NCBI GenBank assembly: GCA_965644495.1
Contig: CBFFSA010000007.1
Coordinates: 310,001-374,000 of the forward strand
Length of the DNA: 64,000 nt
Direction of reading: 5' to 3'
Source: Perkinsela sp. CCAP 1560/9
Taxonomy: Eukaryota; Protista; Euglenozoa: Kinetoplastea
Position numbers and translations under genes: made by a program. How positions within the stretch are numbered: the first letter of the stretch is position 1; the number at the start of each line of letters is the position of its first letter. This document shows, piece after piece, positions 6,577-13,160 of this stretch. The notes beneath the pieces were generated by a model. The model ran no database searches, was not told the origin of the DNA, and was given only the letters and a program-made list of their open reading frames with translations.

Positions 6577-6690
6577 AACTCCCTGGTGAGAGCTGGAACT
6601 GTTGAGCCAGGGGTTTCCCGGCCGAAAGGCCGCAGTCCTAACTCCCTGATGGGAGTCGGAACTGTTGAGCCAGAACTCCCCGGCCAAAAT
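6577..6690. repeat. Two ~63-bp imperfect direct repeats
   Basis: aactccctg(g/a)tg(a/g)gag..ggaactgttgagccag...cccggcc at 6577 and 6640. Confidence 0.85.
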
Positions 6691-6754: not shown

Positions 6755-9700
6755 GAGAGGCTTGGCGTCCGACCGTCTCTCCCACAGGAAGTGCGCGTGA
6801 CTTTCCGAGCCGGGGCTAGCCAAGCTCTACTTCCTCTAGTGAGATGCAGTCTCCTATAACCCTGCTGGGGCAAAGCCGTAAGACGGTCGGACACCCCCCT
6901 TTTTATTTATTTCGCTTCGCGCTGCATTGACACAGAATACTCCTCCTCGAACGCACTTGGCAAAGCCGTCACAAAGAAACCGCGCGGCGGTGACGTGCCA
7001 GGCTTACGACGATTCCGCATATCACACGTGACCCGTAAGACTCAACCCATTGAACAACTCCAACGTTGCCCGGAGGTCACATACGACGCGCCATATAGAA
7101 TCCGTGATGCTCCCGTCAAGGTGTCAAAACTACCGCCCACTAAACCAAGTGTCCCTTGTGCCCATAAATGCCAGGACAAATCAGCATGCCTTCACGTATG
7201 TTGCAAAGTGAAACCCGAAAGGTCTGTTCATCCTAGAGTCCCTCTTCCCTCTTCGGAAGCCGTGGCTATAGACAGTTCACTAGCTCCCGGTAGAAGGCCC
7301 TGTAAGCATACGTGCCGCGACAAGACAAATTGTTTGCACCAGTGCTGCAAAATAGGAGTCCTCATCACGGGTGCTACAGATAATCCTCGACCAGAACGGC
7401 ACCTCGGGGAGTCACCACTAACACGGCCACATAGCCCACCGACAGTAGCCACATCGATAGAAACCGATCCGCAAGTCTCAACAGATGCCATACCGAGCGA
7501 AGAGGCCCAGTATGAGGAACTGTCAACCGGTAATCCGCCGTCGTCCGCCGTAATATCAGCAAACACGGCCAACTATCGCCCGTGTCGGCACATATGCAGC
7601 AATAAAACTCAGTGCAAACACCAATGTTGCAAGACAGGGGTCATGATCGTCGAAGAAAACAGTCAGAATCGAGTATGGTCACTTAGGAATTTGTTTACGA
7701 GGACATTTCCTGCCGATGCTAGCATAATATCACCACAGAATCACCCTAGCTGGCCATCCGAGACAGGAAACTTGAGCGGTACTCAGGCTGTAAACCACGA
7801 ACTCTCTCATACACGCACTCCCCCGGAACCTCATGTTAGTAGAGATAGCAATATAGAACGGATTATCAATTCGGAAGGTATCGTCAGATCTACAATTGAG
7901 CGTAGGAAATGTAAGTAACATTAAGAAAAAGTACCTACCCAACTTAGTTAACAAACCGAAAACAGGTCGCCCTCGCAAGCTTACAGAGACATGCTCCAAT
8001 CGCGTCCGCCGCCTCATCACCAGCGGTGCAACTAAGGATGCAGTCGCGACCAGTAAAAGGTTGAGAGATGAGGGGGTTGCAGATGTTTCGCCCCAAACCA
8101 TTCGGGTTTCCCTTCGGAAGCGTGGTTTGAAGGGGAAGAAGAAATTACGGAAACCCCACCTTACGAAGCGTCACAAAGCTCTACGTCTTGCCTTTGCGAA
8201 GAAGTATGAGCATTGGACGAACGCCGACTGGAGCCGTGTGCTTTTCACTGATGAAAGTAAGATCTGCCGTTTCGAGTCGAATGGCAGCCGGTGGGCGTGG
8301 GTGAGCTTTGGGGAAGCACTTTCAGAGCGAAATACACACAGCACCGTGAAGTACGGTGGGGGATCCATCATGGTATGGGGGTGTATGATGGCTCACGGCG
8401 TGGGCTCCATTGCTCTGGTTCATGGCAACATGAATGCTGAACAGTACGTTCAAATACTTCAACAGAATTTGTCTCCTTCCCTCCACAAGTTGGAAGTCAT
8501 GAAGGACCGGATCATCTTCCAACAAGATAATGATCCAAAGCACACGAGTAAGAAGGCCCGGGAATTCCTTCGTTTACAAGAATTGTGTGTCCTAGACTGG
8601 CCCCCGCAGTCTCCCGATTTAAATCCCATAGAGCACCTATGGGGCGAGCTCAAAAAGTCGACTGCGGATCATCCAGATCCTCCCGTAGGAATGTTGGAAC
8701 TTTGGGAACGCGCCCAAAAAGCATGGGCAGACCTTCCTCCGAGTGCATGTCTTCCTCTTGTCCGTAGCATACCCCCTCGTTTGAGGGCAGTAATTAGGGC
8801 GAAGGGGGGACTTACGAAGTATTAAGTTTTGGTCATTTTGGTTTGGTAAGGGTGAAGTAAGGCAAAGTTTTGGTCAAAAAAAAATAATCTCAAAAAAGTG
8901 AAAAAAGTGTTCAAGTGTTGGGATCGCATTATATCTTTCATAGTTTTTTATTGTAAGATCGTTGATGAAGTCTAAGTACGTGGGAATGTAAGCACTACTC
9001 CAGCCTACACTACTGTAATATACTACTGCATTATCCTCTGCATCTCTTTTGTAAAATATAAAAACATTAAAATTTGTGAAAACATTTGAACACTTTTGTT
9101 AGTTACTGTACCCCCTGAATCAGTCTCTCGCCGTAATTGCGCACATAAATGTAAAGACAAAACCAAATGTAAGCATTCATGTTGTCAAAAAGGAGTTCTC
9201 CTCAAAGCTGGCGAAATCGCATACTCTGCCATAAGCTGGACAGCGAAAAATATTCTATTCCTTGCGCTTGGTGATGCCGAACGCGCTGCAGCTTCTTCAC
9301 AAGCTTCGGAACCGCCCGCCCCAGTCGTGGCACCCCGCCTACCAGTTCGCACCAACTCCCTGCCCCGCACGAGTCCACTGTCCAGCCCTCTACGACATTT
9401 CCCACCAGCCCACGAGACGCAACCGGATTCCTCACCTTCTGTACCACGTATAGAATCCGTAGCAGAACCCGCGCTTTTGCCTTTACCTTTACCTTTACCT
9501 TCCCCACCAGAAGTAAATCGCAGACGCACGATACTGCAGAGAATCCCTCGAGCCCAGCACGCCCCAGCCCCAACCATTCAGCCTATTCGTGACCTGCAGA
9601 ATCTTCTCGAAACATTTGACACAATAACGGGAGGACGAGTTCTGGTACGTTTTACAGAGGAACAGTGGGGCAATATTATTACGAAAATTGAGGAACGTTG

Positions 9701-12560
9701 CAATTTCTACGTGCACCCAGCGCGAAACGATGAGGATGCCCTGTCTCAAGCTAAAACATTATCCGCGATCCTCGCCGTAACCGTCTTTGAAGCCGCACGG
9801 GAGAGCGACCCGACACACGGCTTTCTCCTGCGAACCAGAGCTGGCAGAGCCAGAAGGAACTCACGGCCCTTGGCCATCGAACGTACCACGAAGAGGCTAC
9901 GCACACATGTTCGTCAACTCAAACGTGCACTTACCTTCATGAAGGGGGCCGCGAGAAACAAGCAGCGGGGAGAAATTAAGGAAGTAGGGAAAGCGTTGAA
10001 GTTGTACGTGGAGGAAGCCAATCTACAGAAGAGGGAAATCGATCGACGATGGGCATTAACTCGGTTCCAGAGAAAACCGTGGACAGCTGCGGGCGAATGC
10101 CTAGATCGCACTGACCCAATCCAGGAACCCGAGACGTCTTACCCTACAGTACCTCTTCAAGAGGTTGAGAACTTCTTCGCGGCATCATTGTCAAAACCTG
10201 AAGAGAATCACAGCATACCCCCCGTCGAGTTCTTGGGACCACGGCCTGACATCGACATGCCATGGTCGGATATTGACACCGAAATGATAGCATCTGCTGT
10301 ATCTTCCAAGCGCTCGGGCGCTGCTCCTGGATCAGACACCGTATCCAACGCTCTGCTCAAGCGTTGTAGCCCTATCTTTGTCCACATCGCTCAAGTATTC
10401 AATGATATCCTTAAATTCGGGGTTTGCCCCCCCACCTGGAAATCTGCCGTAACTCGCCTCATACACAAAGGAGGTCCTACATCAACTATGGAGAATTGGC
10501 GACCGATAAGCTTAACTAGTTGCATAGGGAAACTTTTCAATCCTGAGCCACCGAATCCTTCAACATTCCTTGGATTCTCATGCGCTCGATACATCAGTAC
10601 AAAAAGGATTTCTACCACACATGAATGGGACCGTCGAGCATACACAAGTCTTATGCGAACTCCTTGAACACCAACGACGTCACAAACGGCAATACTTACT
10701 GGCACAGTTCGATATCAAGAACGCTTTCGGATCTATCCCCCACGCAGTACTGTTACAATCCCTAAAATGGGCCCGTATCTCCCCAATTCTAATTAACTAT
10801 ATCAGCGCGCTGTACAAAGGAGCACCTATTCAAATCAAATGTGCTGAAGGCCTTACGAAGTCGATCGAGATCGGCCGTGGAGTATTACAAGGAGATACAC
10901 TGTCGCCGATCTTATTCAACTTGGCAATGGAATTGGTTCTTCGCTTCATCCGTTCAAGTTGCCCACAGTACGGAATCACTTGGGATGGAAAGGAAACCTT
11001 TCTGAAGGCCTTTGCTGACGACCTCAGTATATTCACGAACACACCAAAGGAAATGCAAATTGCCACGAACGTATTGGTCAAAGTTCTAGGCGACATCGGA
11101 ATGAAATTGAACCCAAAACAATGTCCGATTCAACACATGGCAATGACTCAAGACTCAGGCTACATGACAAGACGACCGCAGATAATGATTGAGGCAACAC
11201 CTATTCCTCAAATATGCGATAATGGTCGCACATTCCTGGGTGTGACTCTCGGACCTGGTGCCCAGCATGGTAAAATTCTGTTCCTAAAGCTACGCAATCG
11301 ACTCCGTACCTGGTTACGCAACATAGCTTCCAGCGCCCACGACCTACCCGCCCGACTCTGGATATACAACAATACTCTTTTGTTGTCAATTTATGTCTGA
11401 CTTTTAACCACGTTCTGCGCCTCCAGCGATGCGCTACAAATGAAATCAGAAAATGGTTAAATGTAGCAAAATCCGCGACAAGCGAACTGTTATACTCCGA
11501 GCATGGTTGGAACCTCGTGAGCTTATCCAAACTGGCTTCTTTCAACCGCGAGCGCCGTGGAACAAATGGAGAAATCACGTGATCCCGATGTCCAGCACGC
11601 CCTGCGAGAACGCATCCGGAGAGAAGAAAACAAGAGAAAAGCGGGGTACTTTGGTCCGCCGACTGACTTACTCGGTTCAACTCACAATAACGTACGACGA
11701 CTTCTCGACAGTGAATATGAGAGGCATCTTTCGGAAGCCGTGCAAAGGCGCACTTCAGTTGCGGGAAGATGGTTCCGCGTAGCGACGGAAGCAGACCTCG
11801 CGAGGGACTTCGCTGCCGCCCTATGAAATCTCAAAAGCGAATCGCTATCACGATTTACGGCTACCGTACTCACAGAAACGCCACTCCCCACTAGAGTGTC
11901 TCTCCGCAAATGGGGCGTATCGACACACACAAACGACAAGTGTCCCATCTGCGATACTGAAACGCAAACCGCGCGACATATTCTCTCCGGGTGTAGAAAA
12001 GCACTCGAGCAAGGACGATATACTCTGCGACATAACATGGTGCTACAAGCCCTCGCAAACTCTGTGCAGAAATTCCAAGGGACCAGTCTATATCACTTTG
12101 ACCTCCCTCACTTTCGTTCTACCCCTCCGTGGCTCACGGAACTTGACACCGAGCTGCGACCGGATGGGTGGGTGAAACTGTCCAACGGGGAGGAGTATAT
12201 TATAGAATTGACGTGCCCCTGGGAGGAAAATTTTGTCTAGGCACACGAACGAAAAACTGCCAAGTACACAAATTTCTACCATTCCCGCAAGCTCACAAAC
12301 CCGAGCACTTTCCTACTCGTTTTCGAAGTCGGAGCGAGAGGAAAAATAAGCAGTGCTGGTCGAACTCTGAACACTCTATTTATGGGTAATGATGAGCTGG
12401 TGGCTGATTGCCGGCGCAATATGACCGTGAAGGCTCTGAGAGGGAGCTTCATAGTGTATCAAAACCGCAATGACAAAAATTGGATGGAGGAGAACGTTCT
12501 TGGCGACGCTGAATAGAAACGGGTGACCAAAACGCGTTTTGTGCGCGTTTTCACCATATA
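6755..12560 (+). mobile_element. Degenerate RLE non-LTR retrotransposon (NeSL/HERO/R4-like), interrupted by a Tc1 element
   Basis: RT motifs APGSDTV, NWRPISL, FDIKNAFGSIPH, GVLQGDTLSPILF, AFADDL. CCHC knuckle CPIC..TARHILSGC, RHNMVL, endonuclease RPDGWV..IIELTCPWE..KTAKY..FEVGARG. Several frameshifts and stops. 3' hairpin at 12522-12555. The 5' boundary is uncertain. Confidence 0.9.
7856..9108 (+). mobile_element. Tc1 (DD34E) transposon lacking its left end
   Basis: ORF 7896-8825 has GRPRKL, VLFTDESK, FQQDNDPKH and WPPQSPDLNPIEHLW (34 residues between D and E). Right end ...ttgaacacttttgttagttactg|TA; TA also at 7854-7855. Confidence 0.92.
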
Positions 12561-13160
12561 AATCTCTGCAGGATTACCTGTATGATACAATATACCTTTC
12601 CTACCATCACCTTTCCATATACATTGAATATTTTGGAGCCACATGTATGTGGCTCCGGGATTTGGACCGGTAAAAGCAGGGTTATAGGAGACCGCACCTC
12701 ACTAGAGGATTTTTTTTCTAAATATTTTGGACTCAGAGGGGTGATAGGCAAGGAAACGCTCTAGTTTTTGGAGATCTGTTGAATGCCGAAGGAATTGGGT
12801 CAAAAGCTCTTACGGTGTGCTCTATGGTTTGGGAGGCAACCAGTACCTGGACTGTATATCCTTCCTTAGCCACCCAAAATGAGCCTTCCGAAGAAGAGGG
12901 TCCATTAGGATGTTCTCATGGGGTTCTGAGCAATCAGGAGGGCACCGGGTTAACGCAAAGTAGCTGGGGAAGGTTTTCAACGTCATTTTGTGGCGATTCG
13001 CCTGTGAAATGCGAAGTTGTCTTGGAGAGTCACCATGTGACTGTTAAGGAGCATAAATCGGGCGTGGTCTCTGGCCAGGTAGAAGACTTTCGGTTTCCGG
13101 TCATAGGAGTTGAAGTGATTCTTCATAGCAAAAGGGAAAGGTTCACAAGCGAATACTGAA
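12560..13160 (-). mobile_element. Possible decayed 3' end of another retroelement
   Basis: The minus frame gives a broken CPPDCSEPHENILMD...QKLERFL tract, then a hairpin (ggagccacat/atgtggctcc) and a 35-nt motif shared with 6832-6866. Confidence 0.3.

What the first reader, a model, noticed from the sequence alone, without database searches (positions are those of the whole stretch)
6860..9190. RLE retrotransposon with four Mer3/HFM1-type zinc fingers as its N-terminal module
Seen: four CxHxCxxKxxCxHxCC motifs start at 7157, 7301, 7583 and 9138 (e.g. CAHKCKDKTKCKHSCCQKG), separated by Pro/Ser-rich linkers. Removing the Tc1 insertion (7856-9110) fuses them in frame (..RDSNI|PPESV..) ahead of the RT and RLE. 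Known: RLE elements usually carry C2H2, Myb or CCHC N-terminal modules, and this Cys/His spacing is that of the C-terminal finger of the meiotic helicase Mer3/HFM1. Inference: a retroposon lineage using a different targeting module, which may recognise a new target site or branched DNA. I cannot confirm that it is undescribed.
Basis: partly seen in the sequence, partly recalled or inferred. Interest (0 to 1): 0.8.

Follow-up and report, generated by a model that had tools for sequence, protein, structure and literature searches.

The report
Retrotransposon carrying Mer3/HFM1-type zinc fingers
A dead copy of an R2-like jumping gene in a kinetoplastid-like protist carries four copies of the small Cys/His finger otherwise known from the tail of the meiotic helicase Mer3/HFM1, in the place where such elements normally have C2H2/Myb DNA-binding motifs. 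This gives an uncharacterised finger a second, testable context.

Summary
Window 6927-12594 is a 5'-truncated, decayed copy of a non-LTR retrotransposon with a reverse transcriptase, a CCHC knuckle and a restriction-like endonuclease. Four CxHxCx2Kx2CxHxCC fingers start at 7157, 7301, 7583 and 9138. A Tc1-like unit (7856-9110, TA/TA) splits the array.

Natural uninterrupted copies show that the fingers and the RT lie in one ORF. L023 has 1561 aa, and L018 and L019 lack the Tc1-like unit.

The Mer3/HFM1 comparison holds both ways. A profile of the element's fingers retrieves single-Sec63 Ski2-like helicases that carry one finger just after Sec63. A profile built from those helicase fingers alone finds all four window fingers (hhalign probability 99.2%).

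The fingers are under purifying selection (dN/dS 0.11, against 0.57 in the linkers). On the RT tree they are confined to one clade, apart from the R2-like and Utopia-like sequences available.

Their function is not shown. Insertion sites look dispersed. Full-length copies carry a further conserved N-terminal domain, resembling homing-endonuclease DNA-binding modules, that the window copy has lost.

I found no paper describing this finger in a retrotransposon. Repbase could not be searched. The scan had already met this lineage elsewhere in the same genome (s1-682865).

Verdict: a real new variant of a known kind, of moderate to high interest.

The parts
6927..12594 (+). Decayed, 5'-truncated copy of the RLE non-LTR retrotransposon (subfamily A), interrupted by the Tc1-like unit.
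   Evidence: blastn against six other genomic copies. tblastn of the intact L023 ORF maps residues 129-1556 onto it. One frameshift and six in-frame stops.
7157..7204 (+). Finger 1, CAHKCQDKSACLHVCC.
   Evidence: The helicase-only profile A5 hits 7139-7210 at E 1.1e-8.
7301..7348 (+). Finger 2, CKHTCRDKTNCLHQCC.
   Evidence: The A5 profile hits 7280-7375 at E 1.7e-14.
7583..7630 (+). Finger 3, CRHICSNKTQCKHQCC.
   Evidence: The A5 profile hits 7568-7648 at E 1.6e-10.
7856..9110 (+). Tc1/mariner-like insertion. Its transposase ORF is at 7896-8825, and TA flanks it at 7854-55 and 9109-10.
   Evidence: Pfam DDE_3 1.9e-15 and HTH_Tnp_Tc3_2 1.2e-9. Empty sites in L018 and L019. The same 1255-bp unit occurs elsewhere in the genome. 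No terminal inverted repeat was found.
9138..9185 (+). Finger 4, CAHKCKDKTKCKHSCC.
   Evidence: The A5 profile hits 9126-9206 at E 4.3e-9.
10570..11400 (+). Reverse transcriptase core (FADD at 11011-11022).
   Evidence: Pfam RVT_1 5.9e-24. Motif coordinates. Best match among solved structures is R2Bm 8gh6, E 2.7e-34 (run with the L023 orthologue).
11941..12213 (+). CCHC knuckle (11941-11994) and restriction-like endonuclease motifs: RHN 12028-36, RPD 12157-65, IIELT 12199-12213.
   Evidence: Motifs read in frame. They fit the RLE pattern C..C-H-C / RHD/N / E / R/KPD / D/E quoted in PMC12857005. Weak Pfam zf-RVT match.
12560..12594 (+). Conserved 3' end: a short hairpin-forming stretch (CTGCAGG..CCTGTA) followed by TGATACAATATA. 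There is no poly-A tail.
   Evidence: The same 3' terminus is seen in all subfamily A copies, with an analogous one in subfamily B.

Best explanation
Window 6927-12594 is a dead copy of a single-ORF, R2-like (restriction-like-endonuclease) non-LTR retrotransposon of a kinetoplastid-like protist.

The full-length protein, from the natural copy L023 (1561 aa), reads in this order:
1. A conserved ~200-aa N-terminal domain.
2. Four Mer3/HFM1-type Cys/His fingers, with consensus (R)P-C-x-H-x-C-x-[DN]-K-x-x-C-x-H-x-C-C-K-x-G-[VIL], separated by Pro/Ser-rich linkers.
3. A Pro-rich spacer.
4. RT, a CCHC knuckle and the RLE.

I propose that the finger array is a modular, zinc-dependent nucleic-acid-binding unit. 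It would occupy the role that C2H2/Myb motifs play in R2: holding target DNA, possibly together with the N-terminal domain, while the RLE nicks and the RT primes on the nick.

Shown: the anatomy, the homology of the finger to the Mer3/HFM1 finger, one ORF in natural copies, purifying selection on the fingers, and restriction of the finger to one RT clade.

Inferred: zinc binding, DNA as the ligand, and any role in site choice.
For: Anatomy and copies.

Homology of the finger:
- Profile A1 of 12 element fingers, searched against 1.84 billion representatives, gave 131 hits.
- I ran 32 of these hits, all of 500 aa or more, through Pfam. 19 are single-Sec63 Ski2-like helicases or fragments of such helicases. 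In the 17 with a Sec63 match the one finger lies C-terminal of that domain.
- Named examples are 'DNA 3'-5' helicase' of Synchytrium and Spizellomyces, and Pichia 'Sec63'.
- The reverse test also passes. Helicase-only profile A5 against A1 by hhalign gives probability 99.2%, E 3.6e-19. A5 finds all four window fingers at E 1e-8 to 1.7e-14.

Selection, subfamily A against B: dN/dS is 0.11 in the finger cores, 0.14 in the N-terminal domain and 0.57 in the linkers.

Modularity: there are at least 150 finger matches in many open frames of about 1400-1860 aa across the genome, with several fingers per frame. Relatives carry 1-5 fingers.

Single origin: the finger-bearing elements form one clade with SH-aLRT 100.

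Position: the fingers sit where RLE LINEs carry ZF/Myb motifs (PMC5678591, PMC4640811).

Charge: each unit of about 23 residues has a net charge of +3 to +7, read directly from the sequence.
Against: - No binding data exist for this finger in any protein. The Mer3 biochemistry paper treats the C-terminal tail as unstructured and links it to self-association, not to DNA (PMC10201424).
- The 3' junctions of about 12 copies show no common target sequence, so the array does not confer strict site specificity.
- The conserved N-terminal domain resembles NUMOD-type DNA-binding modules and could be the real DNA binder.
- There are seven Cys/His ligands per unit, and the zinc stoichiometry is unknown.
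- The AF2 model of one finger is only moderate (pLDDT 74 overall, 85 in the core) and matches no solved fold.
- L017 keeps an open frame without finger 4. L023 keeps one with ligand substitutions in fingers 2 and 3.
Confidence: 0.6

Rival explanations
1. The fingers bind the element's own RNA, acting as a chaperone or RNP-forming module like gag CCHC knuckles or the ORF1 proteins of other LINEs. Target DNA would be engaged by the N-terminal NUMOD-like domain and by the RLE with its CCHC knuckle.
For: - The units are basic and Cys/His-rich.
- P0091 combines one such finger with three CCHC zinc knuckles.
- A separate DNA-binding candidate lies upstream.
- The conserved 3' hairpin could be a protein-binding site.
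Against: - In the helicases the finger follows a DNA helicase core.
- R2-type elements are held to bind their RNA through the region just ahead of the RT and through the RT itself, not through the N-terminal fingers. This rests on my own knowledge of published R2 work and was not tested here.
Confidence: 0.2
2. The fingers are a protein-protein interface. They could mediate self-association of the retrotransposon protein, or recruit a host recombination or repair factor that also recognises the Mer3/HFM1 tail.
For: The Mer3 C-terminal region contributes to Mer3 self-association (PMC10201424). RLE LINE integration is thought to need two protein subunits; that rests on my own knowledge and was not tested here.
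Against: - Tandem arrays with variable copy number and relaxed linkers are more typical of nucleic-acid binders.
- The host's own single-Sec63 helicase has no such finger, so no shared host partner is evident in this organism.
Confidence: 0.15
3. The motifs are a chance or decaying feature without function.
For: The window copy is dead. Some copies have lost or mutated individual fingers.
Against: - 0 motifs were found in 100 shuffles.
- dN/dS in the fingers is 0.11.
- The ligands, the Lys and the CCKxG tail are conserved across families that are otherwise unalignable in this region.
Confidence: 0.02

Closest known systems
R2 elements (for example R2Bm, PDB 8gh6)
   Same: - Single ORF with the order N-terminal finger region, RT, CCHC knuckle, PD-(D/E)xK endonuclease.
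- R2Bm is the best solved-structure match (E 2.7e-34, covering the RT through the linker).
   Different: - The fingers are the Mer3/HFM1 type, not C2H2.
- Pfam detects no Myb motif.
- The element is not rDNA-specific.
- On the RT tree it falls outside the group holding the named R2 and C2H2-bearing sequences.
- The 5' end is a spliced-leader relic, and the 3' end is a hairpin plus an AT-rich tail.
CRE clade of kinetoplastids (CRE1/2, SLACS, CZAR)
   Same: The host group is the same, judging from a kinetoplastid-type spliced leader. Both have an RT with an RLE, and CRE elements carry 1-2 zinc-finger-like motifs (PMC12278014).
   Different: - CRE elements insert at one position of spliced-leader RNA genes and end in poly-A.
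- These copies are dispersed; only 1 of about 12 3' junctions abuts a leader-derived repeat. They have no poly-A tail.
- No CRE reference sequence was reachable, so the RT relationship is untested.
C-terminal zinc finger of Mer3/HFM1
   Same: The consensus is the same, PCxHxCx[DN]KxxCxHxCCKxG[VI]. The HFM1 'zinc finger motif' holds the infertility variant p.C1157Y (PMC8383409).
   Different: - The helicases carry one copy (two in Pichia) after the Sec63 domain. Here 1-6 tandem copies lie ahead of an RT.
- Human HFM1 itself was not aligned here. The helicases tested were the ones the search returned; those named are fungal and chytrid.
HERO and NeSL/Utopia RLE clades
   Same: RLE LINEs with variable N-terminal fingers. 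HERO holds many families that are not site-specific (PMC4640811).
   Different: - Utopia-like oomycete sequences (RNase H plus RT) group with the R2-like sequences, away from this clade.
- No HERO reference was available. The nearest finger-less relatives are unnamed metagenomic and octocoral proteins that carry C2HC-like N-terminal motifs or none.

Membership tests
RLE-type (R2-group) non-LTR retrotransposon | Reverse transcriptase domain of the non-LTR type. | tested here: met
   Pfam RVT_1 5.9e-24 on window 10570-11400. R2Bm 8gh6 at E 2.7e-34.
RLE-type (R2-group) non-LTR retrotransposon | CCHC knuckle followed by a PD-(D/E)xK restriction-like endonuclease, C-terminal of the RT. | tested here: met
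   CPICx8Hx4C, RHN, RPD and IIELT motifs at window 11941-12213. The columns are invariant across relatives.
RLE-type (R2-group) non-LTR retrotransposon | A single ORF encoding all the domains. | tested here: met
   L023 has a 1561-aa ORF from Met to stop.
RLE-type (R2-group) non-LTR retrotransposon | N-terminal C2H2 zinc finger and/or Myb motifs. | tested here: not met
   No Pfam C2H2 or Myb hit at E<=1. A different finger type occupies the position.
RLE-type (R2-group) non-LTR retrotransposon | Target-site-specific insertion (typical of the group but not universal). | tested here: inconclusive
   The 3' flanks of about 12 copies differ. Two pairs share homologous flanks. Too few copies to decide.
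CRE clade (SLACS/CZAR/CRE1/2) | Insertion at a fixed position of spliced-leader RNA genes. | tested here: not met
   Only L021 abuts a leader-derived repeat.
CRE clade (SLACS/CZAR/CRE1/2) | Poly-A 3' tail. | tested here: not met
   Copies end in ...TGATACAATATA or ...ACATATATA.
CRE clade (SLACS/CZAR/CRE1/2) | RT groups with CRE reference sequences. | not testable with these tools
   No named CRE protein came back from either RT search. Repbase is not available.
Mer3/HFM1-type zinc finger | Motif CxHxCx2Kx2CxHxCC with the flanking P and the KxG[VIL] tail. | tested here: met
   Alignments A1 and A5. hhalign probability 99.2%.
Mer3/HFM1-type zinc finger | Reciprocal retrieval between the element fingers and the helicase fingers. 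| tested here: met
   in the forward direction. in the reverse direction.
Mer3/HFM1-type zinc finger | Location in the tail of a single-cassette Ski2-like helicase, after Sec63. | tested here: not met
   Here the fingers lie upstream of an RT. The host's single-Sec63 helicase has no finger in its tail.
Mer3/HFM1-type zinc finger | Zinc coordination. | not testable with these tools
   There is no solved structure by sequence search or by fold search.
Tc1/mariner (the insertion) | DDE transposase with an HTH, and a TA target duplication. | tested here: met
   TA at 7854-55 and 9109-10.
Tc1/mariner (the insertion) | Terminal inverted repeats. | tested here: not met
   No arm pair lies at the two ends. 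The same two ends recur in other copies.

The most novel reading that the evidence does not exclude
The Mer3/HFM1 finger is an autonomous nucleic-acid-binding, possibly structure-sensing, zinc module. It was taken up once by a euglenozoan LINE lineage and multiplied into arrays that, together with a homing-endonuclease-like N-terminal domain, guide integration. The retrotransposon would then be the first tractable system for finding out what the HFM1 finger, which is mutated in human infertility, recognises.
Probability: 0.25. Interest if true: 0.8.

Novelty: new variant of a known kind. Interest (0 to 1): 0.6.

Why it matters
RLE LINEs are studied both as the oldest LINE design and as programmable gene-insertion tools, and their N-terminal DNA-binding modules decide where they land. 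A lineage that swapped C2H2/Myb for arrays of a different, structurally unsolved finger widens the known repertoire of such modules.

The same finger sits in the tail of Mer3/HFM1. There it is annotated but uncharacterised, and it holds a variant associated with human infertility (PMC8383409). Many tandem, selected copies in a mobile element give a natural alignment and a simple protein fragment with which to test what the finger binds.

Tried and rejected
- **Pfam on the finger ORFs:** no family.
- **Solved structures by sequence:** nothing with the finger region or with profile A1.
- **ESM-Atlas feature search of the array:** no usable hit.
- **Word-indexed protein search with the finger region alone:** nothing at E<=1. 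A 256-aa query made mostly of linkers is a poor probe, so this says little.
- **Foldseek and VIA-align on the single-finger AF2 model:** no match. The domain is too small for this to mean that the fold is new.
- **Naming the RT clade:** two RT searches returned no named CRE, HERO, R4 or NeSL protein, so the tree places the lineage only relative to R2-like, Utopia-like and unnamed groups.
- **Organism name from sequencing runs:** the names are coded.
- **Tc1 presence/absence polymorphism:** the 7854->9111 joints in the run contigs carry the paralogues' C and other paralogue differences, so they come from other copies, not from an empty allele.
- **L017 deletion as a Tc1 excision scar:** rejected. 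L017 reads on past the Tc1 site and then has an unrelated in-frame deletion of about 745 nt.
- **Shared 3' flanks of L017 and L018:** they look like leucine-rich-repeat remnants, but only about 17 codons long. That is too thin to claim a target.
- **Rfam at gathering threshold:** no RNA family in the window.

Full report
**What is in the window**

ORF listing and direct reading show four matches to CxHxCx5CxHxCC on the + strand, at 7157, 7301, 7583 and 9138. The window holds exactly these four in six frames. One hundred shuffles gave none.

Between fingers 3 and 4 lies a 1255-bp unit (7856-9110). It encodes a DDE_3/HTH_Tnp_Tc3_2 transposase and is flanked by TA on both sides.

Downstream are an RVT_1 reverse transcriptase (E 5.9e-24; FADD at 11011) and a CCHC knuckle (11941-11994). 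The RHN, RPD and IIELT motifs of a restriction-like endonuclease follow.

**Copies elsewhere in the genome**

The assembly (21 Mb, 110 contigs) holds two subfamilies.
- Subfamily A comprises the window, L017, L018 and L019, at 94-97% identity.
- Subfamily B comprises L020-L023. It is about 72% identical to A, and its members are 96-98% identical to each other.

L018 and L019 run from window position 7854 straight to 9111.

L023 has an uninterrupted 1561-aa ORF from Met to stop. It holds the fingers, the RT and the RLE.

The full element is 4858 bp. The window copy starts about 484 nt into it, at 6927. It also has one frameshift near 10541 and six in-frame stops. I built no repaired or consensus sequence; every statement rests on natural copies.

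**Is the finger the Mer3/HFM1 finger?**

Pfam, the sequence search of solved structures and the ESM-Atlas feature search gave nothing. I then built a 34-column profile of 12 fingers from three element families (A1). I searched it against 1.84 billion representative proteins and got 131 hits at E<=1e-3.

I ran 32 of these hits, all of 500 aa or more, through Pfam.
- 19 are single-cassette Ski2-like helicases (DEAD, Helicase_C, wHTH, one Sec63) or fragments of such helicases.
- In the 17 that have a Sec63 match, the single finger lies C-terminal of that domain.
- Named members are annotated 'DNA 3'-5' helicase' in Synchytrium and Spizellomyces, and 'Sec63' in Pichia.

This is the Mer3/HFM1 architecture. 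The clinical literature places a 'zinc finger motif' in the corresponding part of HFM1 (p.C1157Y, PMC8383409).

The reverse test also passes. A profile made only from the helicase fingers (A5) aligns to A1 with hhalign probability 99.2% and E 3.6e-19. Run on this genome, it finds all four window fingers at E 1.7e-14 to 1.1e-8.

The shared consensus goes beyond the Cys/His spacing: P-C-x-H-x-C-x-[DN]-K-x-x-C-x-H-x-C-C-K-x-G-[VIL]. Human HFM1 itself was not aligned, because I had no tool-supplied sequence for it.

**Distribution**

In this genome the finger occurs at least 150 times, in many open frames of about 1400-1860 aa, with several fingers per frame.

Outside it, RT searches found the finger only in the closest relatives. 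These are P0001-P0005, P0216, P0223 and P0273. They are at least 40% identical to the query in the RT-RLE region, come from ENA assemblies and carry 1-5 fingers.

The next relatives, at 24-31% identity, carry C2HC-like or C2H2 N-terminal motifs, or none.

On a maximum-likelihood tree of 45 RT-RLE sequences, the finger-bearing elements form one clade (SH-aLRT 100). That clade lies inside a supported group (99) together with those unnamed and octocoral elements. The group holding the named R2, C2H2-bearing and Utopia-like sequences is separate.

I could not obtain CRE, HERO, R4 or NeSL references, so the clade name stays open.

The host's own single-Sec63 helicase (C1:948194) has no such finger in its 653-aa tail. 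No recent capture from the resident gene is therefore visible.

One unrelated RT protein (P0108) has two such fingers C-terminal of the RT. One protein (P0091) pairs a finger with CCHC knuckles.

**Are the fingers functional?**

Between subfamilies A and B, dN/dS is 0.11 in the finger cores, 0.14 in the N-terminal domain and 0.57 in the linkers. All four finger positions are kept across the two subfamilies.

Individual copies have private lesions. L023 has ligand substitutions in fingers 2 and 3. L017 lost finger 4 through an in-frame deletion of about 745 nt.

Each unit is strongly basic, with a net charge of +3 to +7 read from the sequence. An AlphaFold2 model of one unit, built with 136 aligned fingers, is compact, with pLDDT about 85 in the core. 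It has no match among solved structures.

**What else is in the protein?**

Full-length copies have a conserved ~200-aa domain ahead of the fingers. The truncated window copy lacks most of it.

Its AlphaFold2 model is confident for residues 30-185. Residues ~30-100 resemble the modular DNA-binding domains of homing endonucleases:
- I-HmuI, Z 6.0.
- A Paulinella DNA-binding protein, Z 5.5.
- I-TevI, Z 4.9.
- The next row for this part of the model scores Z 3.4.
- The ESM-Atlas rows are dominated by NUMOD1, NUMOD4 and I-HmuI_NUMOD-like families.

These scores are modest, so this is a lead and not a finding. It does mean that the finger array is not the only candidate for target binding.

**Target sites**

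The 3' junctions of about 12 copies abut unrelated sequences.
- The window copy sits inside a short repeat with a 35-nt inverted motif.
- L021 abuts a spliced-leader-derived repeat.
- L022 abuts a TA microsatellite.
- L017 and L018 share homologous flanks, as do L020 and L067. In both pairs the flanks are more diverged than the elements, which hints at preferred sites. The sample is too small to conclude.

There is no poly-A tail. Copies end in a conserved hairpin plus an AT-rich tail.

**Host**

All six full-length copies begin with ATAAAGATACAGTTTCTGTACCTTGTTG. This is nt 11-38 of a 38-nt leader that also stands before GTATGAGAAGC next to a 5S rRNA gene in L026.

The ACAGTTTCTGTAC core is the kinetoplastid/diplonemid spliced-leader signature, which I know from outside these tools. 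The leader-like sequence occurs 605 times in the genome.

Earlier notes of this scan describe the same leader-headed elements and the same finger arrays on other DNA of this genome. I treated them as leads and repeated the key tests.

**Literature**

[quoted passage not shown] Trypanosomatid CRE elements are described with 1-2 ZF-like motifs, poly-A tails and insertion into spliced-leader genes (PMC12278014).

No paper in the library combines 'non-LTR retrotransposon' with HFM1. The Mer3 structure-function paper does not mention zinc at all.

**Verdict**

The element is a new variant of the RLE LINE design.

I take the fingers to be a zinc-dependent nucleic-acid-binding module. My odds are about 0.6 for DNA or target engagement, 0.2 for RNA binding and 0.15 for protein interaction. 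None of these functions is shown.

Noticed in passing
L017, L018, L020-L023 5' ends; L026 (G000:C1:659819-662838): All six full-length copies of both subfamilies begin at nt 11 of the host's 38-nt spliced leader (ATAAAGATACAGTTTCTGTACCTTGTTG). Other element families in the genome carry almost the whole leader. The leader-like 20-mer occurs 605 times. The likely true leader gene lies beside a 5S rRNA gene.
   Followed up: partly
L023:7143-7787:- (ORF residues 1-215); absent from the window copy: A conserved ~200-aa domain lies upstream of the fingers. Residues ~30-100 of the AlphaFold2 model resemble the NUMOD-type DNA-binding modules of the homing endonucleases I-HmuI and I-TevI (Z 6.0 and 4.9, with matching ESM-Atlas rows).
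   Followed up: partly
window 7856-9110; G000:C1:1791097-1793763 and C1:2924665-2927265: The Tc1-like unit has no left inverted repeat, yet at least eight copies share exactly the same two ends. Some copies sit as head-to-head inverted pairs separated by 157 bp, so the 1255-bp unit may be half of a larger palindromic element.
   Followed up: partly
G000:C1:948194-949258 and L073: The host's only single-Sec63 (Mer3-like) helicase has a 653-aa tail without the finger that its fungal and chytrid counterparts carry.
   Followed up: partly
P0108 (L074) and P0091: The same finger turns up in two other mobile-element-like proteins from metagenomes. One has two fingers C-terminal of an unrelated RT. 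The other has one finger N-terminal of three CCHC knuckles.
   Followed up: partly
window 6832-6866 and 12675-12709: The retrotransposon copy lies inside a short dispersed repeat that has a 35-nt motif in inverted orientation on both sides. Paralogous repeats (L013, L015) fit a simple insertion without a large deletion.
   Followed up: partly
L017:5591-5650 (minus strand): Copy L017 keeps a 1349-aa open frame although an in-frame internal deletion of about 745 nt removed finger 4 and the Pro-rich spacer.
   Followed up: yes
window 6577-6690: These are tandem ~63-nt units that another note calls hammerhead-like. Rfam at gathering threshold finds no RNA family anywhere in the window.
   Followed up: partly
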